This document shows positions 5,538 to 51,044 of a stretch of DNA of 64,000 bases, piece after piece. The notes beneath the pieces are model-generated. The model was not told the origin of the DNA and ran no database searches. It worked only from the letters and a program-made list of their open reading frames with translations. Position 1 is the stretch's first letter, and the number at the start of each line of letters is the position of its first letter. The stretch is taken from the IMG/VR virus record IMGVR_UViG_3300018080_008436, positions 412,249 through 476,248 of that record. One strand, 5' to 3'. A program made the position numbers and the translations under genes.

Positions 5538-6488
5538 TTATGGATTTACTTCTAGCCCCATTCTTGCATATTCTTCTAGATTTATCGCTGGATTTGAGGC
5601 TTTGACTTTTACAAAAGTCGAATGGTCACATTCTTTCCACAAATCTTCTCTATCCTCTCCCCCTTCAAAGATTATCATATCATAATCTATGTGTGCGGGA
5701 GTCATCCACTCTCCATTATGCCAAATCTGGAAATCCACATCTGCATCTCTATATTGGTTCAACTTGTTGATATGGACTTCTGCATAAAGGAAATCTGGTG
5801 GTTTTTCAATTTTTAATGTATATTTATTATAGCCTGCTGGGACTATCCAAGGGTTTTGGAAAACAAAATACAAATCTTTTGAAACTTTTAACAAATCACC
5901 TCTTTGTTGAACCCAATTCCCCTTTTCATACCAATTCTTATTTTGAGAGAATGAAACAATTCCCCTTCTAACAACATTTTGCTTATCCTTATATGTCCCA
6001 TAATATCCTGATTTAGCAATGGGACTGTAAAAAGTCAGATGACTTCCATCGGCCTCCACTTGTCTTCGAGCGTTATTAAAGGCTCTAACTTCTTCATCTT
6101 CCTCTTCTTCAATAGGATCAGCTTCTTGAGGAGCGTTCGGATCAGCTTCTTGAGGAGCGTTCGGATCAGCTTCTTGAGGAGCGTTCGGATCTATCCCTGC
6201 CAGAAGTTGAGCATTTCGTTCTCTCTCCAATAATTCAAAAAGATCATCTGGTTCATCTATGTCTGGAATTTTCATTTTTCCATCTTTCAACGCATCGTCT
6301 ATTTGTTCTGGAGTTAGAGGTTTTTTATAACCTTTTATCTTCCCTTGTTTATCAAGTACTGGTTGCCTTTCTTCTTGCGTCCAGCCTATTTCTTTTAGCC
6401 TATTCTGATATTCTTTACATTCTATATAGTCTGCTCTTTGAGCCTCTTTAAGAAAAGAATAAAATTCAAATTGCTTGTACCAACTCAT
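5538..6488 (-). CDS. hypothetical protein with WY-type leader (MSWYKQ...LKEAQ) and DPNAPQEA repeats
   Basis: 316-aa ORF with AGGAGA SD. Confidence 0.75.
   Translation of the reverse strand: MSWYKQFEFYSFLKEAQRADYIECKEYQNRLKEIGWTQEERQPVLDKQGKIKGYKKPLTPEQIDDALKDGKMKIPDIDEPDDLFELLERERNAQLLAGIDPNAPQEADPNAPQEADPNAPQEADPIEEEEDEEVRAFNNARRQVEADGSHLTFYSPIAKSGYYGTYKDKQNVVRRGIVSFSQNKNWYEKGNWVQQRGDLLKVSKDLYFVFQNPWIVPAGYNKYTLKIEKPPDFLYAEVHINKLNQYRDADVDFQIWHNGEWMTPAHIDYDMIIFEGGEDREDLWKECDHSTFVKVKASNPAINLEEYARMGLEVNP
6115..6191. repeat. 3 x 24-bp perfect coding tandem repeat (DPNAPQEA)
   Basis: ggatcagcttcttgaggagcgttc x3. Confidence 0.9.
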
Positions 6489-6504
6489 AGAATCTCCTAA
6501 AAAC

Positions 6505-6912
6505 TTATAACATCATTAAATCACTAAAATCTGTATCTTCTCTTTCAGGTGGGTTACAAAGTTCCTCAAGCTGTTCTACAGAAAGGCTTGGCTTAATATT
6601 GTCAAGTCCTCTGAACTCAACAACTTGATCGGTCCCCTTGTTTTTAAGAACTATGGCGTAAAGATCTCCACTAATGAAGTAAACGGATATATCATTTCTA
6701 GCAAGATATTCTCTGGCATAAGATTCTGACTGGACACTCCAACCACCTTCTTGACCCAGTTCCATTAGTCTTTTTACACCTGTAACATCTTCTTTCGTAA
6801 AATTGAAGTTTCTGTTTGCAGTTTTTAGCCAACCAGATTTCTGACCCATGACCAACCACTCTTTTTTAGACATTTGAACTGTTGTCTTTCCAGCTTTTCT
6901 AACTAGTTTCAT
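6505..6912 (-). CDS. hypothetical protein with shared N-terminal leader module
   Basis: MKLVRKAGKTTVQMSKKEWLVMGQKSGWLKTA. Confidence 0.75.
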   Translation of the reverse strand: MKLVRKAGKTTVQMSKKEWLVMGQKSGWLKTANRNFNFTKEDVTGVKRLMELGQEGGWSVQSESYAREYLARNDISVYFISGDLYAIVLKNKGTDQVVEFRGLDNIKPSLSVEQLEELCNPPEREDTDFSDLMML

Positions 6913-6915
6913 TAT

Positions 6916-7197
6916 TTACTCCTCAACATTAGCAACATCTTTTTCAGATGGTGCTTGGCCATGTTCCAGATGCATTTTCATTGCATCACGTAGCTTGAAT
7001 TTATCTGTATATCTAACAGTAATTACTCCACCTGGATAAATGAGGTCCCAGCAGATTTCACCATCACAATCTTTATTCCTAATCATCCCTCCAGCATCAC
7101 GCCATCTGTCGATTAGTTCTTCCATTTCTCTTCTAAAAACAAAGACATCATTCTCTCTTTGTAAAAATGGCATCGCTATTTTAATAATCTTCATCAA
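6916..7197 (-). CDS. hypothetical protein with MKIIKIA leader
   Basis: 93-aa ORF; promoter motif at 7230-7254. Confidence 0.65.
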   Translation of the reverse strand: MMKIIKIAMPFLQRENDVFVFRREMEELIDRWRDAGGMIRNKDCDGEICWDLIYPGGVITVRYTDKFKLRDAMKMHLEHGQAPSEKDVANVEE

Positions 7198-7229
7198 ATA
7201 TCCCCAAATGAATTGCTTATTCTAATTTA

Positions 7230-7254
7230 TTCTTCAATATCAACCATCTAACCT
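7230..7254 (-). promoter_or_regulatory. AGG-N19-GAA putative late promoter
   Basis: AGG ttagatggttgatattgaa GAATAA. Confidence 0.65.
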
Positions 7255-7264
7255 TCATTAACAC

Positions 7265-7291
7265 AAAAAAAGCCCCTTGATTTCAAGGGGC
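7265..7291 (-). terminator. rho-independent terminator
   Basis: GCCCCTTG/CAAGGGGC stem followed by a U-tract on the minus strand. Confidence 0.8.
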
Positions 7292-7371
7292 AGAAATAAT
7301 GCTCTGTCATTCAGGGAAGCAAAAATAATGCCTTATTCCCAAACAGCATCCATAAGTTCATATATTTATTT

Positions 7372-7947
7372 TTATTTATTCTCGCAGACATCTATTAACT
7401 CATAGATTAAATCTTTTTGATCATCTGTGAATTTCCATCGGACATTAACATTTTTGTCTGCCCAGTCTTTTGCGCTATTACCTTTCTCTTGCCCCATACT
7501 GACCCAATCAGCCACCATTTCAGCTATGTCAATGTCCCCCATCTTAGTGCCATCAATCATTTTTTCGGGTGGTTTGTCTCTATCATTTCTGTTGATGAGA
7601 TCGACCGTTTCAGATGAATGAAACTCTGGATGATGCCTATTACTTTTTACATGATGCTCAGTAGCTTTATTCATCTTTTCATCCATCCCATCTGGCGGTT
7701 CCCAGTCTACACCATCATCTTTGCATTTATAACTCCATGTTACATAAAGATATGGTTCATACTCTGGATCTTCAAATTTACTATCGTCATGATGACTGGC
7801 CTGTTCGATAAGGTCTTCGAATTTGTCATCGTAGTCAGCAATCTTTTTGCAGTATTTCTGAACTCGCTTGATATGTTCTCTAGTTCTTTTTTCAAAGAAC
7901 TCTTCTATTTCTTTCTTCTCACTTTTCGCTGTCCTGATTAATTTCAT
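7372..7947 (-). CDS. HD-like phosphohydrolase (DUF5662-like) with MKLIRTA leader
   Basis: RTREHI..V, HHDDSKF, HHVKSNRHHPEFH and EMVADW motifs; start 7947 after GGAGG. Confidence 0.65.
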   Translation of the reverse strand: MKLIRTAKSEKKEIEEFFEKRTREHIKRVQKYCKKIADYDDKFEDLIEQASHHDDSKFEDPEYEPYLYVTWSYKCKDDGVDWEPPDGMDEKMNKATEHHVKSNRHHPEFHSSETVDLINRNDRDKPPEKMIDGTKMGDIDIAEMVADWVSMGQEKGNSAKDWADKNVNVRWKFTDDQKDLIYELIDVCENK

Positions 7948-7965
7948 TGTAATACCTCCATGATT

Positions 7966-8001
7966 ATTATACAAAAAACCCCTTGTAGAGACAAGGGGTT
8001 T
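7966..8001 (-). promoter_or_regulatory. terminator hairpin with an embedded sigma70-type promoter (TTGTCT-17-TATAAT)
   Basis: AACCCCTTGT/ACAAGGGGTT stem plus U-tract; -35 at 7989-7994, -10 at 7966-7971. Confidence 0.7.
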
Positions 8002-8018
8002 AGATGTACACAGAAAGC

Positions 8019-8333
8019 TTATTTTTCTGGTTTGGGTTGTGGAGGTTGGGGTCTGCCTTTTCCATGGCCTCTCATGCCTTTTCCAGGGCCATTACCATGT
8101 CTTCCCCTCATGCCTTCACGATGACGCTTCATCCTTTCTTTCATCATAGCAGTTAACTCTGAACGATCTAACTTACCATCTTTGTCAACGTCAAAGTTTT
8201 CCATGACTCTGTCCAATACCTTTTCCAAACACTTCTCTGGACTTGGACGTTCAGGGCGTTCGGGTCTCTCGGTTTCTTGGGCTGAAAGAGTGCAGGCAAA
8301 AACTAGGGCGAGTAATACGATTAATGCTTTCAT
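8019..8333 (-). CDS. secreted EF-hand protein
   Basis: Signal peptide MKALIVLLALVFACTLSA; EF-hand loop FDVDKDGKLDRSEL; Gly/Pro/Arg-rich tail; start 8333 after AAGGAG. Confidence 0.75.
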   Translation of the reverse strand: MKALIVLLALVFACTLSAQETERPERPERPSPEKCLEKVLDRVMENFDVDKDGKLDRSELTAMMKERMKRHREGMRGRHGNGPGKGMRGHGKGRPQPPQPKPEK

Positions 8334-8370
8334 AATAAGATCTCCTTTATTAAGCAATGAATTTGTTAAC

Positions 8371-8385
8371 GCAAGTGCTGTGCCA
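8371..8385 (-). promoter_or_regulatory. sigma54 (RpoN) -24/-12 promoter
   Basis: TGGCAC-AGCAC-TTGC matches the -24/-12 consensus spacing, 38 nt upstream of the EF-hand start. Confidence 0.7.
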
Positions 8386-8459
8386 AATGTTTTATTGGGT
8401 AAATGGTCACTATAGTGCGCAAATATTAGAATTTTGGTAAAAATAGTGCGCAAAATATG

Positions 8460-8795
8460 CTATCTAAACTCATTTCCCCATTTGTCGAGGTTTTCGTATG
8501 GTATTGTAAACAAATAATCTTCAACTTTGCTTGAACGTGTCCCAAAAGAGACATCATAATATATCCCATCACATTTGACTAAAGCGTGGTTAACTCCATC
8601 CTTTCTACAAACAACAACATCTGCTTTGTATCCCGCTTCTCTTAATGCTTTGCAATACCTTCCACACAGATTACTGCAATCATTGGCATTGGGAATCTTC
8701 TTTTCTTTATTAAGTGACCAGAAAATATCTGGTAATGGTATTTTTTGAAAATTTAGTAATTTGTATAAGAACGATTTGAACCATTTCATGATCAC
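8460..8795 (-). CDS. small transglutaminase/papain-fold-like protein
   Basis: DCSN...NHALV...YYDV putative Cys-His-Asp arrangement. Confidence 0.5.
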   Translation of the reverse strand: MIMKWFKSFLYKLLNFQKIPLPDIFWSLNKEKKIPNANDCSNLCGRYCKALREAGYKADVVVCRKDGVNHALVKCDGIYYDVSFGTRSSKVEDYLFTIPYENLDKWGNEFR

Positions 8796-9212
8796 TTAAC
8801 ATTCGTATGATGTCCTCTTTTCATACTCTGGGCTTCTAGAATAGCTCGTTATAAATACATCAGGGTAATTAGCACCGAATTGATCTGCCGTAATGTCAAT
8901 TATTACCTTATTGTTTAATTCAACCCAGCAATGGTAACTCTTCATACAGTTCCCGCAAACTTTTTTGGCATCGAACCCTCTTTTATTAAGTTCTGCGCAC
9001 AATTCTTCGCTCATCATTTCACAGAATGGAGGAGATAGGAATTTTCCCCCGCTAAGAATTTCGTCTAACCGTTCTCTTTTTTCATCATCGTTGTCATAAT
9101 CTTCATTAACTTCTTCAAGTAGCTCTGAAACATATTCATCCATCATTCTTTCTCTGATCTCTGAAGCGATCTCAAAAATAATCCCCATTCTTGCTACTTT
9201 AATGATTTTCAT
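8796..9212 (-). CDS. transglutaminase/papain-fold-like protein (DITADQF family) with MKIIKVA leader
   Basis: FCEMMS...YHCWVEL...IIDITADQF; start reassigned to 9212. Confidence 0.6.
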   Translation of the reverse strand: MKIIKVARMGIIFEIASEIRERMMDEYVSELLEEVNEDYDNDDEKRERLDEILSGGKFLSPPFCEMMSEELCAELNKRGFDAKKVCGNCMKSYHCWVELNNKVIIDITADQFGANYPDVFITSYSRSPEYEKRTSYEC

Positions 9213-9213
9213 A

Positions 9214-9495
9214 TTAACCAAGAGTATCTTGAACTCTGTCCTCTCGTAACCAAAATTCTCCACTTCCACCAACAGGTTTCAATTTATATTGTGTCCTGCC
9301 GAACATTTTACGTTTACTAAGAACTTCAACAGGAAAGAAAACAGAAGTTGACCCTCTTCCAATTTCATAAAACTGAGCATATTTTATTTGTCCAACTTCG
9401 CTCTCATCCAGTTCCATCTCTTCTGGCACTTTTCTTTCTGGCTCTTCCTTCTGTGGCATAGGAGGAATTACTTGAGCCGCCTTCATTATTTTCAT
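9214..9495 (-). CDS. hypothetical protein with MKIMKAAQ leader
   Basis: 93-aa ORF coupled to its neighbours. Confidence 0.65.
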   Translation of the reverse strand: MKIMKAAQVIPPMPQKEEPERKVPEEMELDESEVGQIKYAQFYEIGRGSTSVFFPVEVLSKRKMFGRTQYKLKPVGGSGEFWLREDRVQDTLG

Positions 9496-9920
9496 TATCC
9501 ATCTCCTTTTATTATCTCGAATCCATTATCTAACCAACCTGCAACTGGAACTCCTTCAACAGGAGAGATGCCCATGCCAAATTTCAAAGAGACGACATCA
9601 TATCCAAGCATTCTCAAAAGAACCAAAGCTTGACTGGAAGTATGACCAACATAACAAACAAGAAGAATCTTTTTGTCTTTAGGTAATTTATCCAGGTTCT
9701 CTTTTTCTAATAAATCTAGCCAGAAAATGTTCTCTGCTCCTTCGATATGCCCTTCAGCAAAGTCTTCGGGCTTTCTTATGTCTAAGATGAAGAAGTTATC
9801 CAAGCCTTTTTCCTTCAACTCAACAGGAGTGATGTAGTTCCAAGTATCGTCTGTTTTGTCAATGAACTCTTTCAGCTTTTCCGTGAAAGTTAGATCGCAT
9901 GATATTTTTATGAGCTTCAT
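9495..9920 (-). CDS. rhodanese-domain protein with MKLIKIS leader
   Basis: ILDIRKPEDFAEGHIEGAENI; active-site loop VCYVGHTS; LRMLGY...GW. Confidence 0.85.
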   Translation of the reverse strand: MKLIKISCDLTFTEKLKEFIDKTDDTWNYITPVELKEKGLDNFFILDIRKPEDFAEGHIEGAENIFWLDLLEKENLDKLPKDKKILLVCYVGHTSSQALVLLRMLGYDVVSLKFGMGISPVEGVPVAGWLDNGFEIIKGDG

Positions 9921-9958
9921 TCACCCTTCCTTAATTCATAAGTATAGTCTTATTATAC

Positions 9959-9983
9959 TTCTAAATAAGGTGTTAGTATCCCT
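9959..9983 (-). promoter_or_regulatory. AGG-N19-GAA putative late promoter
   Basis: AGG gatactaacaccttattta GAAGTA. Confidence 0.6.
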
Positions 9984-10073
9984 ACACAAAAATACCCCCT
10001 GAGGCGAACCTAAGCAAGTCCATCGCAAGCGATATACTCGCTTTGAGACGAATCCCAAGGGGCAAATACTAAG

Positions 10074-10427
10074 TTACCTGTTGGGTTTTATGACTATTAC
10101 ATCAAAAACTCCACTATTTTGATCATTAGCTTCATCTAATGAATCTATGTCAGGGGACATTCGCTCTACGGAATCTATGTGTCGCTCATCAGGTGTTATT
10201 TCCTCTAAGGAATCGACATACTGCTCATCAAACTCTTCTAAACTATCTGTAACTTTCATGACAACTTGGCGATTTTCTATTTCATCCCAAATGTCACTAA
10301 GATCGTTATGACTTTCTACGAAACCTAAGCTTCCAACTCTCATTTGGGTATTAGTATCAGTATTGTGTATGTAAATTACCCCAGTTTCATAAACCCTCAG
10401 TTCACAATTCCTAATGATTATTTCCAC
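10074..10427 (-). CDS. hypothetical protein
   Basis: 117-aa ORF, GTG start after AGGAG. Confidence 0.6.
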   Translation of the reverse strand: MEIIIRNCELRVYETGVIYIHNTDTNTQMRVGSLGFVESHNDLSDIWDEIENRQVVMKVTDSLEEFDEQYVDSLEEITPDERHIDSVERMSPDIDSLDEANDQNSGVFDVIVIKPNR

Positions 10428-10457
10428 TTTTGGCTCCTAGTTTATTACAGTAATCCT

Positions 10458-10709
10458 TTATTCACCTTCTCTGTACCTTCTTCTTTCCAAACATCTATTG
10501 TAATTGTCTCGATAATTTAACTCTATGTCAGGATTTGGCAACAATCTAAGATTGACACTAATCTGGGTTATAATATCCTCTATGCTATCCCCAATTAGTA
10601 CTTGCTTACCTTGTTCAACATTGCACGCAATATAATCTTCCACCAAATTTTCCTCTATCTCGCCAAGAACCTGAAATCCATTAAAAATAGTTACTAGCGT
10701 CTTCTTCAT
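10458..10709 (-). CDS. hypothetical protein
   Basis: 83-aa ORF with GAGG SD and TGTATAAT upstream. Confidence 0.6.
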   Translation of the reverse strand: MKKTLVTIFNGFQVLGEIEENLVEDYIACNVEQGKQVLIGDSIEDIITQISVNLRLLPNPDIELNYRDNYNRCLERRRYREGE

Positions 10710-10843
10710 GATTTAACCTCTTTATGCTACTTACCATAAGGACATTATACAGATAACCTTGATTCATTTTTCTCTTGTAAAAAGCAACATTTTTCCACCT
10801 GGACTCTTACTATCAGAGATTCTGGTTTTCAAGCAAAATCGAC

Positions 10844-10879
10844 AAAAAAAATGCCCCTTGGGACGAATCCCAAGGGGCA
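10844..10879 (-). terminator. rho-independent terminator with UUCG loop
   Basis: TGCCCCTTGGGA-TTCG-TCCCAAGGGGCA plus U8. Confidence 0.85.
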
Positions 10880-10919
10880 AATATCTTTTACGAAATATCT
10901 ACAGAGTAGGTGTAAATAA

Positions 10920-11318
10920 TTAGCTGTCTTGAATTCCTTCTCTTGCTTTTTGGAGTTTGTCCATTAGCATTTGGTGTTCTTCAGGAGTAGGTTCCTCTGG
11001 AACTATGTCTTCCATTTCGTCATGCTCAAACAAATCCCAAAGCCCTTGCCTTTTTAATTGCTCTTCTATTATAGCCGCACGGAATTTATTGCATTTACCT
11101 TCGAAATAATCATCTACTTCAGCCAAATCAAGTGGTTGGTTTATAGCATCTTGGAAAATTTTTCTGAACCTGGCTAATACAGCTTCTGTACCTCCATCCC
11201 AATCTCCTTCCAAATCGTTTGCTTTTTTCATCCACCCAGCCTTCTTCCCCATATCAGTCCACTCTTTGCGAGTCATCTTAATCCTAGTTTTTCCACCAGC
11301 AGTTTTAACTATTTTCAT
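10920..11318 (-). CDS. hypothetical protein with shared N-terminal leader module
   Basis: MKIVKTAGGKTRIKMTRKEWTDMGKKAGWMKKA; AGG-N18-GAATAA at 11354-11377. Confidence 0.75.
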   Translation of the reverse strand: MKIVKTAGGKTRIKMTRKEWTDMGKKAGWMKKANDLEGDWDGGTEAVLARFRKIFQDAINQPLDLAEVDDYFEGKCNKFRAAIIEEQLKRQGLWDLFEHDEMEDIVPEEPTPEEHQMLMDKLQKAREGIQDS

Positions 11319-11397
11319 TTTAATCTCTCCATTAAGGTCTTAATTCTAATTTATTCAAAATCTTTTCTTTTGATCCTTTAATCAGCAGTAATTGTTA

Positions 11398-11925
11398 TTA
11401 AGCCTTTGCCCAAGCCAAGCCTACCCCATTTACACCTAAAGCATTTTTACATGCTTCTATCGTTGTACCTTTAGTTATTACATTATCAACAAAATAAACA
11501 TTCTTGTTGTCTAAATCCATAACGTCTGCATCATCTCTGACAATCATATTGTGCTCTTCAACCGTGTAATTAGGAAGATTTTGCTTTCTCCTTTGATGAG
11601 ATGGTTCTATACTAGAAGACCGACCCAATGGATCATATATCTCAGATCCAGTTATTTTAGCAATTGCCTCGCATAAAAGCATGTTTGACCCCCTATCCCC
11701 TGATGATGATGGAACTGGTACTAAGAGGCTATTAGATGCAACATATTTCGCCATAGTATCAGCCGCTATCTTAATGGCATCTGAATTTTTGTTCTTTATT
11801 TCGTAAGATATCTTTCTAACAAAAGCTTCTTGCTGTGATAGTTCTCTTCTTCTAGGAGAAATATATTGATAAATGGCTATATTTTTGCCATCATTTAAAA
11901 ATTGAGCTTTTTTATACCAGTTCAT
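11398..11925 (-). CDS. phosphoribosyltransferase-fold (ComF-like) protein with MNWYKKAQ leader
   Basis: LLVPVPSS and PRPP-binding loop VYFVDNVITKGTT. Confidence 0.75.
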   Translation of the reverse strand: MNWYKKAQFLNDGKNIAIYQYISPRRRELSQQEAFVRKISYEIKNKNSDAIKIAADTMAKYVASNSLLVPVPSSSGDRGSNMLLCEAIAKITGSEIYDPLGRSSSIEPSHQRRKQNLPNYTVEEHNMIVRDDADVMDLDNKNVYFVDNVITKGTTIEACKNALGVNGVGLAWAKA

Positions 11926-11936
11926 AACAATATTAA

Positions 11937-11961
11937 TTCAAAAATCTGTTCTTCTGACCCT
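11937..11961 (-). promoter_or_regulatory. AGG-N19-GAA putative late promoter
   Basis: AGG gtcagaagaacagattttt GAATTA, 11 nt before the ATG. Confidence 0.65.
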
Positions 11962-11971
11962 TTGTAAACAC

Positions 11972-12004
11972 AAAAATATCCCCTGAGGCGAACCTCAGGG
12001 GATA
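11972..12004 (-). terminator. major capsid gene terminator (UUCG loop)
   Basis: TATCCCCTGAGG-TTCG-CCTCAGGGGATA plus U-tract. Confidence 0.85.
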
Positions 12005-12035
12005 AATACTTTCTACGAGATATCTAAGCTTTCGC

Positions 12036-12899
12036 TTAGCTACCAGCGGTAACTGTGACCTTGGCTACTGCGTAGGTATTGATGATTACAATACCAACTT
12101 CCTCATAAATTACCCAACCGAGGCGGAGCTTCTTTGGATCGTCTGCTGGGAGGACGGTGATATCCTGACGAATCGGGAATGCACCAACGTACTCAGCAGG
12201 AGCGAGCAAGAAGACGGTATCGGTAGGCATCTTTGAAGATACGTGAATATCAGCAGTAAAGAGATGTCCGAACAAACCAGTTGTAAGAACTTCTTTCTGT
12301 GTTGCTTCATCATAGACAGTCTTACCAAATCCACGAATGTCAGCGTAACGAAGAGCATGCATAACAAGCTTACCTACTGTGAGGTCGTGCTGTTCGATGG
12401 TTGCGAAAGCTTGGTTCAAGGCGTTAAGGGTAAGAGCACCACCAGTTGAAACAACGGTATGTGCGGCATCAATTGCGGCGGCGATAGCGTTGAAGATGTT
12501 AAGATCTTCTTCCTTCTGAATCGCTTCTTTAGCTTTGATCTGAGCACGGTCTACAATGTAGAATCTACGAGCTTTAATCTCACTCAAGCGAATAGTAGGA
12601 TTGGTTGCAATCTCGAACGTAGGAACGAGAATTTCTTCACCTTCGGTAATACCATCAGGTACAGCGCCACGACGAGGAATAACCTGGGCGGTCTGGCGAA
12701 CGTCTTTCTCGTAACGTGCATAAGCGCCCTGAGGAAGCTCATCCACCATGAGAAGTTTACGTCCAACTGCTTGATATTCCAATGCTCTACGAATTGGCTC
12801 GACCATGGCCTGAGCCAATGCTACTCTACCTTCAGGTGTCTCAAGCGCCTGAGCGATAAGAGCTTCTCTTTCTGCATTAACAGATCTTTTATTAATCAT
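12036..12899 (-). CDS. major capsid protein (HK97 fold)
   Basis: 287 aa; spine-helix-like DRAQIKAKEAIQKEEDLNIF; C-terminal GWVIYEEVGIVIIN..AV; follows protease/scaffold and decoration genes; strong SD and codon bias. Confidence 0.85.
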   Translation of the reverse strand: MINKRSVNAEREALIAQALETPEGRVALAQAMVEPIRRALEYQAVGRKLLMVDELPQGAYARYEKDVRQTAQVIPRRGAVPDGITEGEEILVPTFEIATNPTIRLSEIKARRFYIVDRAQIKAKEAIQKEEDLNIFNAIAAAIDAAHTVVSTGGALTLNALNQAFATIEQHDLTVGKLVMHALRYADIRGFGKTVYDEATQKEVLTTGLFGHLFTADIHVSSKMPTDTVFLLAPAEYVGAFPIRQDITVLPADDPKKLRLGWVIYEEVGIVIINTYAVAKVTVTAGS

Positions 12900-12969
12900 T
12901 TTGTTTCTCTCCTAATTAGTTGTTCTATAGGGGGTAATAGCCTATAAAATAAACCTTTTTTACTATACC

Positions 12970-13491
12970 TTATACAAGAAGCTTGTATTCGATATAAGTG
13001 TTAGAGTTATCGCCAGCAAGGGCCTGATCGCCATTGATGTCGATGCCAGGTACGCCACTTGGGTATGAGCCAGCGGCACGAGTCAAACGAGCAACAGGAG
13101 TTCCAGTGGTCAAACCACCTTCATCTGTAGTGTCGAGTACACCAAGGGCATTACCATAAAGCAATGCGCCAGGATTGGCGGATGATACGTTTGAAGCGAA
13201 CTGGTCGGTTGCAAACTCACCACCTGAGTGATAGACAGTCATTTTACCTGAAGCTTTGGTTTCGTCAAAATAATCGGAAACCCTGTTCTGCCATCCTGCT
13301 GAGATGCCAGGCATTGCTGAAGCGCTAGTTGACTTGGTGTCACCAGCTACACCGTAAACGGCGGCGTTGGTGCTTGCAAGTACTACTTCGCCAGATGTAT
13401 TAAGAGAGACAAGCTGTCCTTCTTTAATAGTTTCGCCAGAGGCGACATCCTGTTCAGCGGCTACTACATGAAATTTTTCTACAAGAGCCAT
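12970..13491 (-). CDS. putative capsid decoration/cement protein
   Basis: 173 aa, Gly/Ala-rich beta protein (IKEGQLVSL...YGVAGD...GKMTVY) directly upstream of the MCP. Confidence 0.6.
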   Translation of the reverse strand: MALVEKFHVVAAEQDVASGETIKEGQLVSLNTSGEVVLASTNAAVYGVAGDTKSTSASAMPGISAGWQNRVSDYFDETKASGKMTVYHSGGEFATDQFASNVSSANPGALLYGNALGVLDTTDEGGLTTGTPVARLTRAAGSYPSGVPGIDINGDQALAGDNSNTYIEYKLLV

Positions 13492-13677
13492 TTTTTGTTT
13501 CTCCTTTTAGAGTTAATTTTTTGTCAATTTTCATTGACGGTTTTTTAACCAATTTGGTAAACGAAAACCAGCTTAACGCTACGATCTTTCTTCATTGATT
13601 TACTGAAAAAGTTGCCGTCATCTTATTAATCAAAACTGCAAACATTGAATTACTTACCAACTTGTTATATCCCTTTG

Positions 13678-13702
13678 TTCTATATTAATAAGGTGATTTC
13701 CT
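13678..13702 (-). promoter_or_regulatory. AGG-N19-GAA putative late promoter for the decoration/MCP operon
   Basis: AGG aaatcaccttattaatata GAACAA. Confidence 0.65.
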
Positions 13703-13713
13703 GCTTACTATAC

Positions 13714-13760
13714 AAAAAAACCACGAAATATTGCTGATAAAAGCCATATTTCGTGGTTTT
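13714..13760 (-). terminator. rho-independent terminator
   Basis: AAAACCACGAAATAT/ATATTTCGTGGTTTT inverted repeat plus U-tract. Confidence 0.7.
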
Positions 13761-13780
13761 GGCACAAAAATGATTGTTGT

Positions 13781-14014
13781 TTATTCTTTTAGAGACTTTC
13801 TTCTTTGCAATTCTTTTTTCATAGCATCTCTGGTTTTATCTAACTCTTCTAAGTCATATCCCCAATCGATACCATAATTTTCCTGTTCAATAATTTGATT
13901 ATCATAATAAAGCCAAGCCAACTCATTTTCTAATTCTTCTGTTGGAATTTCTTCTATTGGTTCTTTAGATATAATGTATTTATGTTCTTTGTTAGACACT
14001 CTTATTAATTTCAT
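13781..14014 (-). CDS. small hypothetical protein with MKLIRVS leader
   Basis: 77-aa ORF; start overlaps the upstream gene's end. Confidence 0.6.
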   Translation of the reverse strand: MKLIRVSNKEHKYIISKEPIEEIPTEELENELAWLYYDNQIIEQENYGIDWGYDLEELDKTRDAMKKELQRRKSLKE

Positions 14015-14262
14015 AATTTCCCCAATATTTCATCTAATCTTGTTGAAATCTCGACATCTGATAATTGTCTGAATGGAGCCTTAAATACAGTCCCAGACGG
14101 CAATGTAACCTGCACCTTGTCTCCACCTCCCAACACCTCTCTAAACTCATGATAAGTTAATCTATTGGGCTTGGCTCTTAATCCCTTGACATATACGACA
14201 TTGTTGTTTGAGTCTACCCAAACAATCGATGGAATTTTAGAAGATATCTTGATTATTTTCAT
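14011..14262 (-). CDS. small hypothetical protein with MKIIKIS leader
   Basis: 83-aa ORF; AGG-N19-GAATTA at 14272-14296. Confidence 0.6.
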   Translation of the reverse strand: MKIIKISSKIPSIVWVDSNNNVVYVKGLRAKPNRLTYHEFREVLGGGDKVQVTLPSGTVFKAPFRQLSDVEISTRLDEILGKL

Positions 14263-14306
14263 AACAATTAATTCACTAATATAAAAAGAACTTCCTTTAA
14301 GAATAC

Positions 14307-14356: not shown

Positions 14357-14370
14357 AGAGTTAACCGAAC

Positions 14371-17300
14371 TTAACGTTGGTCGTTGTCAATCAAGTTGTC
14401 ATTTAACAACTTGGAACCAATCGTAAACGCTCCAGCGATTTTGTCCTGGAAGCTAGGCTCCTGGGCAGGCTGTGATTGAATTACGATAGCTGGAAGACCA
14501 GTTCCAGCAGTTTTAACTTGCTGTTCAGTAGAAGCAGTTTTAACGGCCTTAACTGGGAACATAGTTTCCGCAACTGAAGCAATTTTATCAACTTCAAACT
14601 GAGCTAATGCAGTAACAACATTATCAAATGTGCTCTTATCAGAAGCAATTCTGTTGTTAGCGGCTAACCATGAAGCAGTACGAAGAGCTTCCTCTTTACG
14701 TGCTTCCTTGATTCTAGCAAGTTGTTCTTCTCTTTTCTGTTGTACCTGTTTGAGATACTTATCATTGATGCCAGGCATATCTGACTGAGTTTCCTTCTCA
14801 ACGCCCATATAAGCGTTATCGATAGGTACATCAGGCTTAGGTGCGTTAACGTCGATGTTATCTGGTCCTTCCTGTCCCATAGTAGCTTTTGCTCTAGGAA
14901 CGTCTGGATTTGCCATCTTTACATCGATGTTGTCAGCGCCTTCATGACCCAAAGAAGCATCGGCTCTAGGAACTCCAGCTTCAACATCACCCTCAACGGT
15001 GTCAACTTCTTTCATCTTTTTCGCTAATGCAAGCTGTCTCTGAGCCTCTTTGAGGTTTTTCTCAGCTTCAGCAATTACAGTACCTTTAATCTCATTATTG
15101 ATTGCAGGCATATCTGATTGAGTAGCTTTCTCAATTCCCATGTAGGAACTATCAACAGCTACGTCTGGCAGACCAGCAGGTGGATTAATGTTATCTGCGC
15201 CTTCATGGCCCATGGTAGCATTAGATCTAGGAACCTGAGGTTTGGCCATAGGAACGTCAATATTATCTGCTCCTTCATTCATCATAGTTGCCTTACTACG
15301 AGGTACTCCAGCTTCAACGTCTTTCTCAATAGTTTTGATGAGCTTAGGCTTACCTGCCAACTTAATGTTGGACTCAGCGCCAGAGCGTCTTACTCTTGAG
15401 GAATTCATTGCCAAAGCCTCTGCAAGTGCGTCGGTATCAAATGTTTCCATATCTTCTCCTTCTGGAACTTCTTCAGCTTCAAATGCAACGTCCTCTGCGA
15501 TGTCCTCTTCCAAGGCTTCATCACCAGTATTTTCAACAACTTCGAGGTTGTCTCCAGTGATGGTTACAGATTCAACTGCGACTTCTTCTGGTTCTTCAAT
15601 AATCTCATCAACCTCTACATCGACTGAGTCGAGTGGTTCGAGATCATCTCCGATTTCAACTTCTTCCAAGATAGCCTGAGCTTTCTTGGCTAAGTTTTCT
15701 TCTTTCTGAATGAACAATTCGTTCATTGTAGCGAGATCGTATTGGCTAAGTGCAATCTTTCCTTCTTTTGCTTCATCAGCAAAAGCTTGGACGTAAATGT
15801 TATCAGATTCTTCTTTAGCGAACTTCTTCTTAATGCAGTTGCAAATTGAAGTTGCTTGAACAACATCATGTCCTTTGCTCTTTTGATCTTCAATACATTC
15901 ATCCATTGGATCTACTTGCATTAAAGTGTCAGCCAATTTTTTCATTTGACGGACTTTGGTAAAACCAAGTCTCTTCAGTTCTTTGCATACGCATTCAGCC
16001 AATGGCTTATCTTTGCAAGGACCGAATCTAGCTACAGTGTTTCCACCATAAGTTCTAGCAATTCTTTCAACGCAGTTAGCAGTTGGGAACGTATCGGCGT
16101 TAGCCTGAGCAGTCTTCAACATTCCAACAACCTTAAGCTTAGAAGCGAACTTCCTTGCTTCTTCTTTGCATTCTGGGCAACTATTGTCAGGAGAAAGATC
16201 CCATTCAACTCTTAACAAGCCGTTTGAAGGATTCTTACTACTAACAATGAGGTTCTTCTCGAAAGAAGTTCCGCATTGTCCGCATTCGCATTTGGTGCGA
16301 CCATCGCCGCTTGCGATGACATCACATTTCTTATTTCCGCAAGCTGGGCAGACATCGCCATGGGCCTCTCTGTTAGCGGCAATACGAACAATAGAATCTT
16401 TATCAATTCTAGTTTGAGCGGCAACTGGAAGTGCTGGCATTTCTTCAGGCTCTTCAGGGCCTTCAACGTCTTCCATACCTTCTTCGCCAACGCTTTTGGT
16501 AGGTTTGATGATTCTAAATTCAATTTCTTTCTTAATGAGAGCTTCGTATTCGGCTCCGCAATTCTGGCAGTTACCGATAATTCCACCGTCATCTTCTTTA
16601 GTTACATCAACATCAGATGAACCACACTCTGGGCAAATGCTCCAAGGAGCTTGCTTTTCGCCAACAGTTGGGATCTCATCCTCTAACTCATCCTCATTAC
16701 CAGTGGTGAGAGCTTGAAGAGCAGGATCTTCTCCCATTGGAGGAGCGTCAAGACCTTCCTCAGGAGCGCCTGGAGCGGCGACTTCGCCTGCGGCCCCTGG
16801 CATTCCGCCACCCATTGGTGACTGAGCAGTTCTTTTCATCTTCTTATTATTATAGGCAACCTGATTAAGGTTTTCCATTTCAATATCAGCGTCAAGTCCG
16901 TCCTCAATGCCTTCTCCTACGAGATCGCCTTCAGGAACGATTTCTTCTTCAATTGGTGCTACTTCTTCGCCAATCGGAATTTCAACTGACTCTTCGCCAG
17001 CATCAGTCTGGACAGCGATTTGAATGGTATTACCATCAATAGTAACATTAGTGATAGAAGCAAGCTTCATATTTTCAGTTGCTAAAGCGCCTTTAGCAAA
17101 CTTAACGATATCTTTCTTGAAAGTGGCAGAAGTCTTTTGAGAACCAAGTTCTTCGAAATCGGTTTCAATTACGATGTCTGCTCCATCAAGTTTTTCAGGA
17201 TTAAGAATTTCTTCCTGAGCCTGGACTCGCTTTCTTGATTCCAAAGAAGCTAGAATTTCTTCTCTTTCAGCATCTCTTTTAGCCTTTTCGTTTTTAACGA

Positions 17301-26168: not shown

Positions 26169-26209
26169 GCACACATTCCTGATTTAGATTTTTTTTATTA
26201 TACAAAATC

Positions 26210-44207: not shown

Positions 44208-44218
44208 AGCTAAAACCT

Positions 44219-44266
44219 AAAAAAGGCTGTATCGTGTTTATTTCCACAAATACAGCCTTTTTACCT
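44219..44266 (-). terminator. terminator after RNR, overlapping an AGG-N19-GAA promoter
   Basis: AAAAAGGCTGTAT...ATACAGCCTTTTT. Confidence 0.7.
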
Positions 44267-44275
44267 TTTATATGA

Positions 44276-47779: not shown

Positions 47780-47790
47780 AAAGTGTCTCC

Positions 47791-49011: not shown

Positions 49012-49174
49012 ACTTGCCTCCGCATAACTTCTTTGTTACTGTTCTATCAATAATCATTCGTCGTTTTTCATATTCAGTTTCAGGTTCAGGTGCAGGTTTA
49101 TTTTCTGTATTTACTCTTGCACCATCTGGCACATGGACATAGAATCCACCCAATTCATATTTTTCATCATTCAT
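48986..49174 (-). CDS. small hypothetical protein
   Basis: 62-aa ORF filling the operon gap. Confidence 0.45.
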   Translation of the reverse strand: MNDEKYELGGFYVHVPDGARVNTENKPAPEPETEYEKRRMIIDRTVTKKLCGGKYGRSDDKR

Positions 49175-49178
49175 TCTA

Positions 49179-49649
49179 TTACCAATCCAAAGATCTGAGT
49201 TCTTCAGTAAGTATTCTGGGCAGTAGACTTATGTGAAATTTAAATTTTGCAACATTTCCGAGAACTGTTACACCAAACTTTCTATGAGTTTTTGACGATA
49301 TCGCCTCAATATAATCTTGTGCTTCTAATTTAGAGGTTAACTCTACAAATTGGCTGATATTCTCTCTTACCAAGAACTCTCCCAAGAAGTCGATCATGAA
49401 AGTGGAGAAGAACTCTTTCTCATATTTGATGTAGGTTTCTCTATCAAACCCCATATCATCCATGAATACTGAGAAAGTGATATCTTCGGTATCAATCGCT
49501 TCTTCATTTTCATTTTGAGACTGGACAAAAGAAAGAGATCTGATTTGAGGCTTCGTTTTTATAAAGCGCTCAATCATTTCTCGACAATGAAAACACTTGC
49601 CTCCATTCGAGTCTTGAAACAACTTATTGTTTGTTTGCTCTTTATTCAC
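49179..49649 (-). CDS. hypothetical protein
   Basis: 156-aa ORF. Confidence 0.6.
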   Translation of the reverse strand: MNKEQTNNKLFQDSNGGKCFHCREMIERFIKTKPQIRSLSFVQSQNENEEAIDTEDITFSVFMDDMGFDRETYIKYEKEFFSTFMIDFLGEFLVRENISQFVELTSKLEAQDYIEAISSKTHRKFGVTVLGNVAKFKFHISLLPRILTEELRSLDW

Positions 49650-49716
49650 TTAATCTTGCCCTTGTTAGATTATGGTTATAAGCCTTTGATATTATAACCT
49701 GAGACGACCCAAAATC

Positions 49717-50184
49717 CTAGAACTTTATTGTCATTTTTAGGCCGACCTTTAAATTTTTCTTAAGTTTATCTCCGATTTCTTGGATATCGTCGTTCATATA
49801 GTCTGGACCTTCGCCTTCTTTGAAAGGTGTAAGTCCAATATCTGGTCTGACATGTTTCTTTATAAAATTACCTATTCTTCCCAATCTCGTCTTGGGTCTT
49901 TTGTCGAATTCTGTCTCTTGAACTGGCTCAACACTCTCTAAAATTTCTTTCTTTTCTTCGTCTGTAAGTCTAAATATCTCGGTTTTAGTTGGCGGTTTTG
50001 AGTCTTCCGTTTCGACTATTTCCACCTTATCCTCTGAAGTTCCAAAAAGAGAGTTCAAATCGTCTTGGACATCTTCCAGTTTTTCCGTCTCTTTTTGTTT
50101 TTGAAGTGCTTTTTCGGCTTCTCTAGCTTCTTTCTCCCGCCGTCTTCTCTCTTTTCTTTCTCGGAGTTTTCGTAGTAATCCCAT
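49717..50184 (-). CDS. charged hypothetical protein
   Basis: 155-aa ORF; AGG-N19-GAA at 50232-50256. Confidence 0.6.
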   Translation of the reverse strand: MGLLRKLRERKERRRREKEAREAEKALQKQKETEKLEDVQDDLNSLFGTSEDKVEIVETEDSKPPTKTEIFRLTDEEKKEILESVEPVQETEFDKRPKTRLGRIGNFIKKHVRPDIGLTPFKEGEGPDYMNDDIQEIGDKLKKNLKVGLKMTIKF

Positions 50185-50189
50185 GTGAA

Positions 50190-50256
50190 AGGTTTTTCTC
50201 GATTTTAGTTAGAATTATTGGTAAGTTATAGTTCAAAAAAGTCAAGTTAAAAACCT
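50190..50256. promoter_or_regulatory. face-to-face AGG-N19-GAA promoter pair serving divergent genes
   Basis: Plus strand 50190-50214 (AGG tttttctcgattttagtta GAATTA); minus strand 50232-50256. Confidence 0.65.
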
Positions 50257-50267
50257 GTATCTGAAAA

Positions 50268-51044
50268 ATGATTAACAACAAAAATAATTGGTATTCTGAG
50301 GCTAGAGAAGCCTCTTTAATCGTTCAAGAAGCTGGTATCACTGATAACTGGAAAACATTGGTGTTTGCGGTTGCACTTGTTTTATCAGGGTTATCTCTAA
50401 TTGATGTATCTGAGAAGACTGGATTACCACCTGAACAAATACAACAAGCCCTCAATAATAAAGAAATAGTTGAACAAGCTCAAAATCAGGAAGAATCATC
50501 AATGCCTAGATTAGATTTCTCTGGAATCGAGGAATTAATTCGACAGCATGAAGTTTCTGGTGCCGAAAGGTATGTTAGAGTTAAAGGTAAAAACGTTGAC
50601 ATAAGAAAAGCATATCCTGATCCTATTCATGGATGGAAAGTTCCAACCATTGGTGTTGGTTATAATTTAAACAAACCTGAAGCCAGAGGGGAAATTGAAG
50701 CTCTAGGACTAGATTATGACAAAGTCCGTAAAGGAGAGCAAGCCCTAACTGATGAACAGGTAAATATACTATACCGAGACGATATAGCAAAAGCAATACT
50801 TTCTGCAAGAAGATTCCTACCGAATTTCGATCAACAACCAACTGAAGTAAAAACAGTAATCGTAGACATGGCTTTTAATTTAGGTGAAACCCGATTGAGA
50901 AAATTTAAAAAATTCAGGAAAGCGCTCGAAAACAACAATTATCAAGAAGCCGCAGAAGAGATGAAAAACTCTAGGTGGTATCATCAAGTTGGGAATAGAG
51001 CGAAAAGAAACGTTGAAAAAATGTTGGAATTTCACTCCAAATAG
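50268..51044 (+). CDS. T4-type (GH24) lysozyme with WY-type leader and hydrophobic helix
   Basis: IRQHE...AYPD...PTIGVGYNL, DMAFNLG, SRWYHQVGNRA; N-terminal NNWYSEAREA and LVFAVALVLSGL. Confidence 0.85.
   Translation: MINNKNNWYSEAREASLIVQEAGITDNWKTLVFAVALVLSGLSLIDVSEKTGLPPEQIQQALNNKEIVEQAQNQEESSMPRLDFSGIEELIRQHEVSGAERYVRVKGKNVDIRKAYPDPIHGWKVPTIGVGYNLNKPEARGEIEALGLDYDKVRKGEQALTDEQVNILYRDDIAKAILSARRFLPNFDQQPTEVKTVIVDMAFNLGETRLRKFKKFRKALENNNYQEAAEEMKNSRWYHQVGNRAKRNVEKMLEFHSK

What the first reader, a model, noticed from the sequence alone, without database searches (positions are those of the whole stretch)
5538..51044. Second leader class (N/S)WYKxAQ, also found internally
Seen: MNWYKKAQ (PRTase, 11925), MSWYKQFEFYSFLKEAQ (6488), MINNKNNWYSEAREA (lysozyme, 50268), and internal ASNNWYKEAQ in the 794-aa protein (~35345-35375), which separates its HExxH domain from the rest. 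All end in the K/R-x-A motif. Inference: an alternative packaging or cleavage tag; the internal copy looks like the fossil of a fusion between two tagged genes.
Basis: partly seen in the sequence, partly recalled or inferred. Interest (0 to 1): 0.65.

Follow-up and report, generated by a model that had tools for sequence, protein, structure and literature searches.

The report
Shared leader tag of phage-G-like megaphages
A short peptide (M-N-W-Y-K-x-A-Q) heads many unrelated proteins in giant phages related to Bacillus phage G and recurs at domain junctions; it is most likely a capsid-loading and protease-cutting tag that marks proteins carried in the phage head.

Summary
All four sites are real. 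Exact NWYKxAQ occurs twice in the window, against 0.00 expected. The window is the end of a 476-kb relative of Bacillus phage G. ATG-NWYKxAQ starts 46 ORFs on 27 viral contigs. Fifteen of these, including all four complete ones, carry the G-type capsid gene. In 596 Gb of prokaryote genomes the pattern stays at chance level. Synonymous codons vary and the tagged proteins are unrelated (kinase, ADP-ribosyltransferase, lysozyme, G6PD, anti-Thoeris Tad6), so this is a peptide-level add-on. It is not an independent class. Orthologues swap MKIIKxSQ and NWYKxAQ at the same position, and phage G uses MKRLIKK on the same protein family. The shared core is hydrophobic-hydrophobic-K/R-x-A/S(-Q). That core also sits at conserved sites flanking the assemblin-fold prohead protease domain. 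The internal copy in the 794-aa protein is no fossil: it is conserved in about 45 of 54 divergent homologues, in a disordered linker. Two relatives have the downstream module as a separate gene that starts at the tag. Best reading: a T4-CTS-like capsid-targeting and maturation-cleavage tag. Neither cleavage nor packaging is shown.

The parts
11902..11925 (-). Class-2 leader MNWYKKAQ at the start of the 175-aa PRT-like protein (gene 11398-11925), directly downstream of the major capsid gene
   Evidence: In homologues the tag is an add-on ahead of the conserved core that begins at 'YISPR'; it is absent from the bacterial-MAG homologue.
6438..6488 (-). Extended class-2 leader MSWYKQFEFYSFLKEAQ at the start of the 316-aa protein (gene 5538-6488)
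   Evidence: Only a near-identical homologue was found. A similar extended form (SWYDREISKKIEKAAQ) sits at the internal tag position of a 794-aa homologue, P0043.
50268..50312 (+). Diverged class-2 leader MINNKNNWYSEAREA, followed by a transmembrane segment and a lysozyme domain (gene 50268-51044)
   Evidence: The G003 orthologue (37% identity) starts MSWYQHQRQQ followed by a TM segment.
35347..35376 (-). Internal tag ASNNWYKEAQ (residues 231-240) of the 794-aa protein, in the disordered linker between the HExxH domain and the rest
   Evidence: Conserved in about 45 of 54 homologues; pLDDT is below 50 over residues 227-270, with a short helix at 234-240.
36040..36063 (-). Class-1 leader MKIIKVSQ at the start of the same 794-aa protein (gene 33679-36063: HExxH domain, linker, CCA-adding-type nucleotidyltransferase domain)
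   Evidence: In longer homologues this position is internal and still carries KIIKQSQ, GWYQKFSQ or SNWYEGIKKNAQ.
17439..19940 (-). Prohead protease (residues about 30-230, assemblin / T4 gp21 fold) fused to a repeat-rich scaffold-like part. Tag-like sites: MLIKVAL (19920-19940), VMIKTAS (19857-19877), MIKTA just after the protease domain (19188-19202), LFKSA (17838-17852).
12036..12899 (-). Major capsid protein (HK97 fold, phrog_2522). 55% identical to phage G gp27 and 72-74% to the three complete relatives that use the tag most.
3718..14262 (-). Run of small genes around the capsid gene, most starting with a class-1 leader (MKIIKNA, MKLVRKA, MKIIKIA, MKLIRTA, MKIIKVA, MKIMKAA, MKLIK, MKIVKTA, MKLIRVS, MKIIKIS). 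The two N-terminal class-2 genes on this strand lie among them.
16105..16122 (-). Internal MLKTAQ in the 957-aa head-module protein (gene 14371-17244). Candidate site of the same kind.
   Evidence: Not conserved in register in the relatives examined, so weak.
20032..20049 (-). Internal IIKLSQ near the C-terminus of the 1305-aa protein that lies between the portal and protease genes (gene 19942-23859). Candidate site.
   Evidence: Conservation not tested.

Best explanation
NWYKxAQ is one variant of a single lineage-specific tag with the core hydrophobic-hydrophobic-(K/R)-x-(A/S), often followed by Q. Its other forms are MKIIKxA/SQ in this genome and MKRLIKK in phage G. Phage-G-like megaphages attach it to the N-terminus of some 13-22 otherwise unrelated proteins per genome, counting whichever variant that genome favours. 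Many of these proteins are host-modifying or anti-defence enzymes. The tag is also kept between modules of fused proteins.

The proposed mechanism is inferred, not shown. As with the T4 capsid targeting sequence, the exposed and disordered tag would bring the protein into the assembling prohead. The assemblin-fold prohead protease would then cut at it, probably after the A/S. That would remove the leader from single-domain cargo and separate the modules of fused cargo. The cargo would then travel with the DNA into the host.

Shown: the tag exists, is selected at the peptide level, is specific to this virus lineage, is an add-on, is interchangeable between variants, is conserved at internal junctions, and matches conserved motifs that flank the protease domain.

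Inferred: binding to a prohead component, cleavage, its exact position, and delivery into the host.
For: - **Recurrence.** ATG-NWYKxAQ starts 46 ORFs on 27 viral contigs, with up to 6 per contig, almost always at the first start codon. MNWYK is the commonest or second commonest M-initial 5-mer in two complete relatives. The core motif starting exactly at residue 3 is seen 8-12 times in three of the four IMG/VR genomes, where about 1 is expected. In phage G it starts at residue 4, 10 times.
- **Peptide-level selection.** Synonymous codons vary at every degenerate position.
- **Lineage link.** The G-type capsid gene is found in 15 of the 27 tag-bearing records, and in 4 of 4 complete ones. The pattern is at chance level in 596 Gb of prokaryote genomes; the only real ORF starts there lie on small MAG contigs.
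- **Add-on to unrelated folds.** The 72 tagged proteins show 4% mean column identity. They match AAA_33 kinase, ART-PolyVal, lysozyme, G6PD, Tad6, HicA, GNAT, cREC_REC and HTH families. The class-1 and phage G sets match PARP-like, ParB_N, GNAT, ferritin-like and SLOG families. The bacterial homologue of the 175-aa protein lacks the tag.
- **Variants are equivalent.** P0068 has MKIKKIKKKAQ where others have NWYKxAQ. P0028 carries three tags. The 'xFHGTS' ART-like family carries MKRLIKK in phage G and MNWYKIAQ in relatives.
- **Internal tags mark module borders.** Stand-alone tagged genes align, from the tag onward, to the C-terminal part of longer tagged proteins (51% identity, E 5e-37; 37.5%, E 2e-20).
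- **Disorder.** Residues 1-6 and 227-270 of the 794-aa model have pLDDT below 50.
- **Protease.** Its best structural matches are T4 gp21 and herpesvirus assemblins, and it matches the PHROG 'head maturation protease'. In 28 homologues the same core motif is conserved at the N-terminus and about 20-45 residues in (x-I/V-K/R-T-A-S, nearly invariant, including phage G gp19). In the closer homologues whose sequence extends past the protease domain it also follows that domain directly, twice in tandem in two of them.
- **Herpes parallel.** In herpesviruses the protease is released from its scaffold by cutting after Ala at such a site (PMC4498786).
- **Gene position.** Tagged genes lie directly downstream of the capsid gene here and in G021.
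- **Proteomics.** One phage G tagged protein (gp346, MKRLFKKA) is reported in particle proteomics (PMC12484599).
Against: - There is no direct evidence of cleavage or of packaging.
- The complex prediction of the protease domain with a tagged N-terminus gave no answer.
- The capsid protein itself shows no such site.
- Only about 58% of unbiased class-2 tags have A/S at position 7.
- Some tagged proteins are odd cargo: G6PD, and proteins with a transmembrane segment right after the tag.
- In phage G, and partly in G003 and G007, tagged genes are scattered among replication genes rather than in the head module.
- The phage G particle proteome also lists many non-structural proteins, so gp346 is weak support.
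- ΦΦ[KR]x[AS] is a short motif that occurs about 250 times per genome, so single internal matches mean little.
Confidence: 0.55

Rival explanations
1. The tag is a docking or sorting motif that is not cleaved. It would be a short linear motif that binds a common partner (a scaffold, portal or DNA-associated protein, or a non-virion partner such as a chaperone or a replication or transcription factory) and stays on the mature protein.
For: The tag is exposed and disordered. It sits both at N-termini and at internal junctions. Many tags lack the A/S-Q end. Tagged genes are scattered in phage G. HTH regulators and metabolic enzymes are among the tagged proteins.
Against: This reading does not explain why the same core motif flanks the protease domain at conserved positions in 28 homologues. 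It also does not explain why the tag always sits at module borders rather than anywhere on the surface.
Confidence: 0.2
2. The tag is a degradation or unfolding signal: an N-terminal recognition tag for ClpXP or another AAA+ protease. From my own knowledge, it resembles ClpX N-motif 1, 'polar-T/φ-φ-basic-φ' (Flynn et al. 2003). It would time the turnover of effector proteins.
For: N-W-Y-K-x and K-I-I-K-x fit polar-φ-φ-basic-x. This genome has two ClpP genes, one of them in the window at 54370-54942. Phage G encodes ClpX and ClpP, and both were detected in particle proteomics (PMC12484599).
Against: ClpP is absent from G003, G007 and G021, the three complete relatives with the most NWYK tags. 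Conserved internal copies cannot act as N-terminal signals unless they are first exposed by a cut. The motif flanks the prohead protease, not ClpP. Use of the host ClpXP is not excluded.
Confidence: 0.07
3. This applies to the internal copy only. It would be the cis-cleavage site of the upstream HExxH metallopeptidase domain, which would release the nucleotidyltransferase part as proposed for MPTase domains of polyvalent proteins. It would be unrelated to the prohead protease.
For: H185, E186, H189 and E196 are nearly invariant. A conserved R-x-A lies 5-7 residues upstream of the WY. Language-model features point to small zincin effector proteases (scores below 0.9, a lead only). Autoprocessing by zincin-like domains is proposed for polyvalent proteins (PMC5512222).
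Against: The same tag heads homologues that lack the HExxH domain (P0048, P0068). It also occurs internally in proteins of G007 and G021 that have no homologue of the 794-aa protein. The complete relatives richest in tags have no homologue of this protein.
Confidence: 0.1
4. There is no function. The similarity would be chance, shared ancestry of paralogues, a DNA-level signal (translation start region or recombination site), or, for the internal copy, a decaying relic of a fusion.
For: Some tagged genes are true paralogues, such as the 'IGH' and 'HGTS' families. A few tagged genes lack an obvious Shine-Dalgarno sequence.
Against: Zero matches are expected by chance. The downstream folds are unrelated. 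Synonymous codons vary. The internal tag is among the best-conserved columns of its region across 54 homologues.
Confidence: 0.03

Closest known systems
T4 capsid targeting sequence (CTS) of the internal proteins IPI-III and other head proteins, removed by the prohead protease gp21 (PMC3012670, PMC5694885)
   Same: In both cases a very short N-terminal leader (10-20 residues in T4) is shared by otherwise diverse proteins, many of them anti-defence or host-modifying. The leader ends in a motif that also occurs in the protease and scaffold proteins. The protease here has the same fold as gp21.
   Different: The sequence is unrelated: T4 uses MKTYQEFIAE and cuts after L/I-x-E. The leader here is shorter (about 7-8 residues). 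It is carried by many more genes per genome (about 13-22). It has interchangeable variants. It is conserved internally at module borders. Function is not demonstrated.
Propeptides and A/S-x-E cleavage motif of the ejection proteins of phiKZ-like giant phages (SPN3US, phiKZ, 201phi2-1; PMC5694885)
   Same: These are giant phages with many head-internal proteins processed by an assemblin-fold protease at a short motif. Paralogues share identical N-termini, and the protease processes itself.
   Different: Their propeptides are mostly over 100 residues long, and cleavage follows Glu. The capsid and protease lineage is different (T4-like, not the phage G type). No register-fixed 8-residue leader is described there.
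Herpesvirus assemblin release (R) and maturation (M) sites (PMC4498786)
   Same: The protease domain is fused to a scaffold part and released by a cut after Ala at a site just past the domain. Here a ΦΦK-T-A-A/S motif sits at that place in the closer homologues. The folds are shared.
   Different: This is an animal virus, and its sites are not used as leaders on cargo proteins. The sequence resemblance (from my own knowledge, Y-V/L-K/Q-A|S) is only approximate.
Polyvalent proteins of phages and conjugative elements (Iyer et al. 2017, PMC5512222)
   Same: The domain repertoire is the same: ART-PolyVal, GNAT, ParB-like, lysozyme, zincin-like HExxH and nucleotidyltransferase. Both involve proposed delivery with the DNA, proposed proteolytic release of modules, and solo versions alongside fused ones.
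   Different: Here most modules are separate genes, each with its own leader. The common element is a linear tag, not an MPTase or MuF domain. The HExxH domain did not match any Pfam model.
Encapsulin cargo-loading peptides
   Same: A short linear peptide directs unrelated cargo into an HK97-fold shell.
   Different: As far as I know these peptides are usually C-terminal, are not cleaved, and bind the shell protein directly. None of this was tested here.

Membership tests
T4-type capsid targeting sequence / protease-removed leader | The same short N-terminal leader on several otherwise unrelated proteins of one phage | tested here: met
T4-type capsid targeting sequence / protease-removed leader | The leader ends in the cleavage motif of the phage's own prohead protease, and the motif is also present in the protease and scaffold proteins | tested here: inconclusive
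   The same core motif is conserved at sites flanking the protease domain. The specificity of the protease is unknown, and the capsid protein shows no such site.
T4-type capsid targeting sequence / protease-removed leader | The prohead protease has the gp21 / assemblin fold | tested here: met
   Foldseek top matches are 5jbl (T4 gp21, probability 0.99-1.0) followed by herpesvirus proteases. It also matches phrog_18299 'head maturation protease'. E-values are modest (3e-3).
T4-type capsid targeting sequence / protease-removed leader | Tagged proteins are present in virions and lack the leader | not testable with these tools
   The only datum is that phage G gp346 (MKRLFKKA) is listed in particle proteomics (PMC12484599). 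The N-terminal state is unknown. The earlier virion mass-spectrometry paper is not held.
T4-type capsid targeting sequence / protease-removed leader | The leader is sufficient to encapsidate a foreign protein | not testable with these tools
   Needs an experiment.
Polyvalent proteins (Iyer 2017) | Several effector-type domains in one polypeptide, with solo versions in related elements | tested here: met
   The 794-aa protein has an HExxH domain plus a CCA-adding-type nucleotidyltransferase. Split relatives exist. ART-PolyVal occurs among tagged proteins.
Polyvalent proteins (Iyer 2017) | A zincin-like MPTase domain recognisable by its family model | tested here: not met
   No Pfam family matches the HExxH domain at E<=0.01. 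There is only a language-model lead to small zincin effector proteases.
ClpX N-terminal recognition motifs | The signal acts at a free N-terminus and a Clp protease is available | tested here: not met
   Conserved internal copies exist. ClpP is absent from three tag-rich complete genomes. The host Clp system was not tested.
Phage-G-like (Donellivirus-type) head module | phrog_2522 capsid protein with the gene order portal - protease - decoration - capsid | tested here: met

The most novel reading that the evidence does not exclude
Phage-G-like megaphages mark their whole 'injectome' with a sequence-readable 7-8-residue header. Any gene or module that begins with ΦΦ(K/R)x(A/S)(Q) would be loaded into the prohead, trimmed or cut apart by the assemblin-fold protease, and delivered with the DNA. 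Tag-plus-module would be an evolutionary cassette that can stand alone or be fused. That would give a list of 15-25 delivered effectors per genome, including anti-defence proteins such as Tad6, ADP-ribosyltransferases, kinases and a membrane-anchored lysozyme. It would also give a minimal packaging tag usable for engineering.
Probability: 0.4. Interest if true: 0.75.

Novelty: new variant of a known kind. Interest (0 to 1): 0.62.

Why it matters
If the tag is a capsid-loading and cleavage signal, the set of proteins that megaphages carry into the cell could be read directly from sequence. So far only one member of this lineage (phage G) is cultivated, and most of its genes have no assigned function. 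The tag would point to candidate early-acting counter-defence and host-takeover proteins. It would define the cleavage specificity of a new branch of assemblin-fold proteases. It would also show how stand-alone effectors and multi-domain 'polyvalent' proteins interconvert, by fusion of tagged cassettes. I found no description of the motif in the searchable literature. It is directly testable in phage G.

Tried and rejected
- **Complex prediction.** The protease domain (residues 28-250) was folded with the first 40 residues of the 175-aa protein. The result was 'no answer' and counts neither for nor against.
- **794-aa protein in relatives.** No match in phage G, G003, G007, G010 or G021. Its homologues came instead from the representative-protein search.
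- **Protease profile against PDB sequences.** Nothing relevant. The fold search was needed.
- **Literature.** The strings NWYKKAQ, MNWYK and related forms gave only irrelevant hits. The phage G virion mass-spectrometry paper (PMC7316594) is not held. The supplementary tables of the 2025 phage G paper are not held. The tail paper has no head data.
- **DNA-level signal.** Rejected because synonymous codons vary.
- **Shared promoter or Shine-Dalgarno peculiarity of tagged genes.** Nothing consistent was found.
- **Paralogy as the sole cause.** Rejected on 4% mean column identity and many unrelated Pfam families.
- **Phage-encoded ClpXP as the reader of the tag.** Weakened by the absence of ClpP in three tag-rich genomes.
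- **Capsid protein N-terminus.** It has no K/R-x-A site that is conserved with phage G.
- **Internal ΦΦKxAQ in the 957-aa protein.** Not aligned with a motif in relatives.
- **HExxH domain.** No Pfam hit. The Atlas features gave only sub-threshold leads.
- **316-aa protein.** No informative homologues.

Full report
**Where the window lies.** The window is the last 64 kb of a 476,248-bp IMG/VR virus record. Its major capsid protein (12036-12899, minus strand) belongs to phrog_2522 and is 55% identical to gp27 of Bacillus phage G. The portal, a 1305-aa protein, a prohead protease fused to a repeat-rich part, a 957-aa protein, a decoration-like protein and the capsid protein lie in the same order as in phage G and in three complete uncultivated relatives. 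Those relatives are G003 (488 kb), G007 (461 kb) and G021 (548 kb).

**The observation.**
- Exact NWYKxAQ occurs twice in the window, against 0.00 in shuffles. It occurs nowhere else in the genome.
- The lysozyme's looser MINNKNNWYSEAREA is backed by its G003 orthologue, which starts MSWYQHQRQQ followed by a transmembrane segment.
- The 316-aa protein has no informative relatives.

**It is a real, widespread, virus-specific leader.**
- A scan of 2.9 million viral contigs for ATG-NWYKxAQ found 46 ORF starts on 27 contigs, with up to six per contig. Nearly all sit at the first start codon after a stop. By my own rough estimate only one or two matches would be expected by chance.
- The same scan of 596 Gb of prokaryote genomes gave 12 matches. 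Nine of these are out of frame, internal, or head very short ORFs. The three real ones lie on small MAG contigs.
- Synonymous codons vary at every degenerate position, so selection acts on the peptide.
- Fifteen of the 27 records, and all four complete ones, carry the phrog_2522 capsid gene at E 1e-59 to 1e-76, apart from one weak, stop-interrupted match. The others are fragments estimated at 5-48% complete.
- MNWYK is the commonest M-initial pentapeptide in G007 and the second commonest in G021.
- ORFs starting M-(N/S/G/A)-W-Y number about 22 in G007, 19 in G021, 13 in G003, 4-5 in this genome and 0 in phage G.

**It is an add-on to unrelated proteins.**
- Seventy-two tagged proteins share only M1, W3 and Y4, with N2 in at least 90% (4% mean column identity).
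- They match many different Pfam families: AAA_33 kinases, ART-PolyVal, PcfJ, lysozyme, G6PD, the anti-Thoeris protein Tad6, cREC_REC, HicA, GNAT, a methyltransferase and HTH domains.
- For the 175-aa PRT-like protein, phage homologues carry the tag ahead of a conserved core that begins at YISPR. A bacterial-MAG homologue lacks it.

**It is not a separate class.**
- This genome mostly uses MK(I/L)(I/V)(K/R)x(A/S). There are 17 copies, 13 of them in the window and most around the capsid gene.
- Phage G uses MKRLIKK(A/S) on about 18-20 ORFs.
- The same 'xFHGTS' ART-like family carries MKRLIKK in phage G and MNWYKIAQ in relatives.
- Among homologues of the 794-aa protein, P0068 starts MKIKKIKKKAQ exactly where others have NWYKxAQ. 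The N-termini of the family read MKIIKxSQ, MRIVRIAQ or MRIYKMAQ. Longer homologues keep KIIKQSQ, GWYQKFSQ or SNWYEGIKKNAQ internally, at the position of our N-terminal MKIIKVSQ.
- The common core is therefore ΦΦ(K/R)x(A/S), often followed by Q. It is strongly enriched in a fixed register: it starts at residue 3 in 8-12 ORFs in three of the four IMG/VR genomes (4 in G003), where about one is expected, and at residue 4 in phage G.

**The internal copy.**
- The 794-aa protein has 179 representative homologues.
- Most are not split. About 45 of 54 aligned homologues (23-51% identity) keep W, Y, K/R, A/S and Q at the junction, preceded by a conserved R-x-A, while the flanking residues vary.
- AlphaFold2 places a folded HExxH domain at residues 8-222. 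The N-terminal tag (1-6) and the linker 227-270, which holds the internal tag as a short helix, have pLDDT below 50. The C-terminal third is a CCA-adding-type nucleotidyltransferase.
- Two relatives have the downstream part as a separate gene that begins at the tag. P0048 lies in a syntenic locus and starts MDWYKINKKAKKSSWYKKAQ. P0068 starts with a class-1 tag.
- The same pattern recurs elsewhere. In G021 and G007 a stand-alone tagged gene aligns, from its tag onward, to the C-terminal module of a longer tagged protein (51% identity, E 5e-37; 37.5%, E 2e-20).
- A fusion of tagged cassettes is thus a good account of the origin. The internal tag is nonetheless under selection and is not a fossil.

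**Link to the prohead protease.**
- Residues about 30-230 of the 833-aa protein (17439-19940) match the PHROG 'head maturation protease'.
- The domain folds with confidence, and its best structural matches are T4 gp21 followed by herpesvirus assemblins.
- In 28 homologues, including phage G gp19, the tag core is conserved at the N-terminus (MLIKVAL, MLYKFAL, MAIYKTAT) and 20-45 residues in (nearly invariant x-I/V-K/R-T-A-S). In the closer homologues whose sequence extends past the protease domain it also follows that domain directly (RMIKTAAL; doubled in P0160 and P0166). The four megaphage genomes share a further site around residue 620-700.
- This arrangement resembles known self-processing sites. 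Herpesvirus assemblin is released from its scaffold by a cut after Ala just past the protease domain (PMC4498786), and T4-like and phiKZ-like proteases process themselves and their cargo at one short motif (PMC5694885).
- I therefore infer that ΦΦ(K/R)x(A/S) is the recognition site of this protease. That remains an inference.

**Best reading and its limits.** The closest known system is the T4 capsid targeting sequence. There, a conserved short leader is the only thing shared by a diverse set of internal, largely anti-defence proteins, and it is removed by the prohead protease (PMC3012670, PMC5694885). The cargo repertoire here also matches the domains of 'polyvalent proteins', which are proposed to be packaged and injected (PMC5512222). 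One tagged phage G protein, gp346, is reported in particle proteomics, but that data set also contains many non-structural proteins.

Several points count against the reading:
- There are no cleavage or packaging data.
- Only about 58% of unbiased class-2 tags have A/S at position 7.
- Some cargo is odd (G6PD, tag followed by a transmembrane segment).
- Tagged genes are scattered in phage G.

**Rivals.**
- A ClpX-type N-terminal signal is weakened because ClpP is absent from the three tag-rich relatives and because internal copies are conserved.
- An uncleaved docking motif remains a serious alternative.
- The HExxH domain may cut its own linker, but the tag occurs widely without that domain.

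**Verdict.** This is a new variant of a known kind of system (a leader or CTS plus a maturation-protease site) in an almost unstudied megaphage lineage. I put confidence in the proposed mechanism at about 0.55.

Noticed in passing
window 23946-26174 (-): The portal ORF (742 aa) matches portal families only over residues about 62-507. Its C-terminal residues about 630-734 match HNH-endonuclease-type PHROGs. Relatives align over only about 440 residues, so this genome seems to have an HNH module fused to or following the portal gene.
   Followed up: no
P0176, P0178, P0179 (homologues of the protease at window 17439-19940): Three protease homologues have a long insertion right after the catalytic GVSMGA motif. 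One of them carries a LAGLIDADG (PF14528) hit, which suggests an intein inside the prohead protease.
   Followed up: no
window 3718-5475, 6505-6912, 10920-11318 (all -); also G000:194959 (+): Four proteins share not only the MKI/LxK leader but a module of about 35 residues (MKxxKxAxGKTxIKMSxKEWxxMGKKAGWLK) ahead of unrelated C-terminal parts. This may be a longer form of the tag or a separate small domain.
   Followed up: no
window about 17841-18173 (-), within the 833-aa protease protein: There are six or seven tandem copies of a unit containing EVITQKQLD in the scaffold-like part downstream of the protease domain. In G003, G007 and G021 the protease, this part and the 957-aa homologue form one ORF of 1834-1890 aa; here they are two genes.
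   Followed up: partly
window 54370-54942 (+); G000:188671-189207: This genome has two ClpP genes and phage G has one. The three complete relatives G003, G007 and G021 have none.
   Followed up: yes
window 58752-61835 and 61895-63943 (-): Two large proteins begin with long serine-rich low-complexity runs (SSSSSSRDSSSS..., SQSESSQSES...). They are followed downstream by 768-, 211- and 267-aa genes. Function not examined; possibly fibre or surface proteins.
   Followed up: no
L005:11652-12971 (+); one unidentified member of alignment A1: A full-length glucose-6-phosphate dehydrogenase (G6PD_N and G6PD_C) carries the leader MNWYKWAQ. One tagged protein matches the anti-Thoeris family Tad6 (E 4.5e-35). 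The metabolic enzyme is unexpected cargo.
   Followed up: partly
window 1108-3135 (+) and 33679-36063 (-): The window holds two CCA-adding / poly(A)-polymerase-type nucleotidyltransferases. One is a canonical 675-aa enzyme with an HD domain. The other is the C-terminal domain of the tagged 794-aa protein.
   Followed up: partly
G000:1-720 (-), the other end of the contig: A 239-aa ORF starting MKIIRVASS lies at the opposite end of the record. The run of tagged genes near the capsid gene may therefore continue across the ends of the assembled contig.
   Followed up: no
window 37021-38082 (-) and L144:1285-2388: A trypsin-like serine protease gene lies three genes upstream of the 794-aa gene, and the same order is kept in a distant relative. 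It is a third protease, besides the prohead protease and ClpP, that could act on the tags.
   Followed up: no
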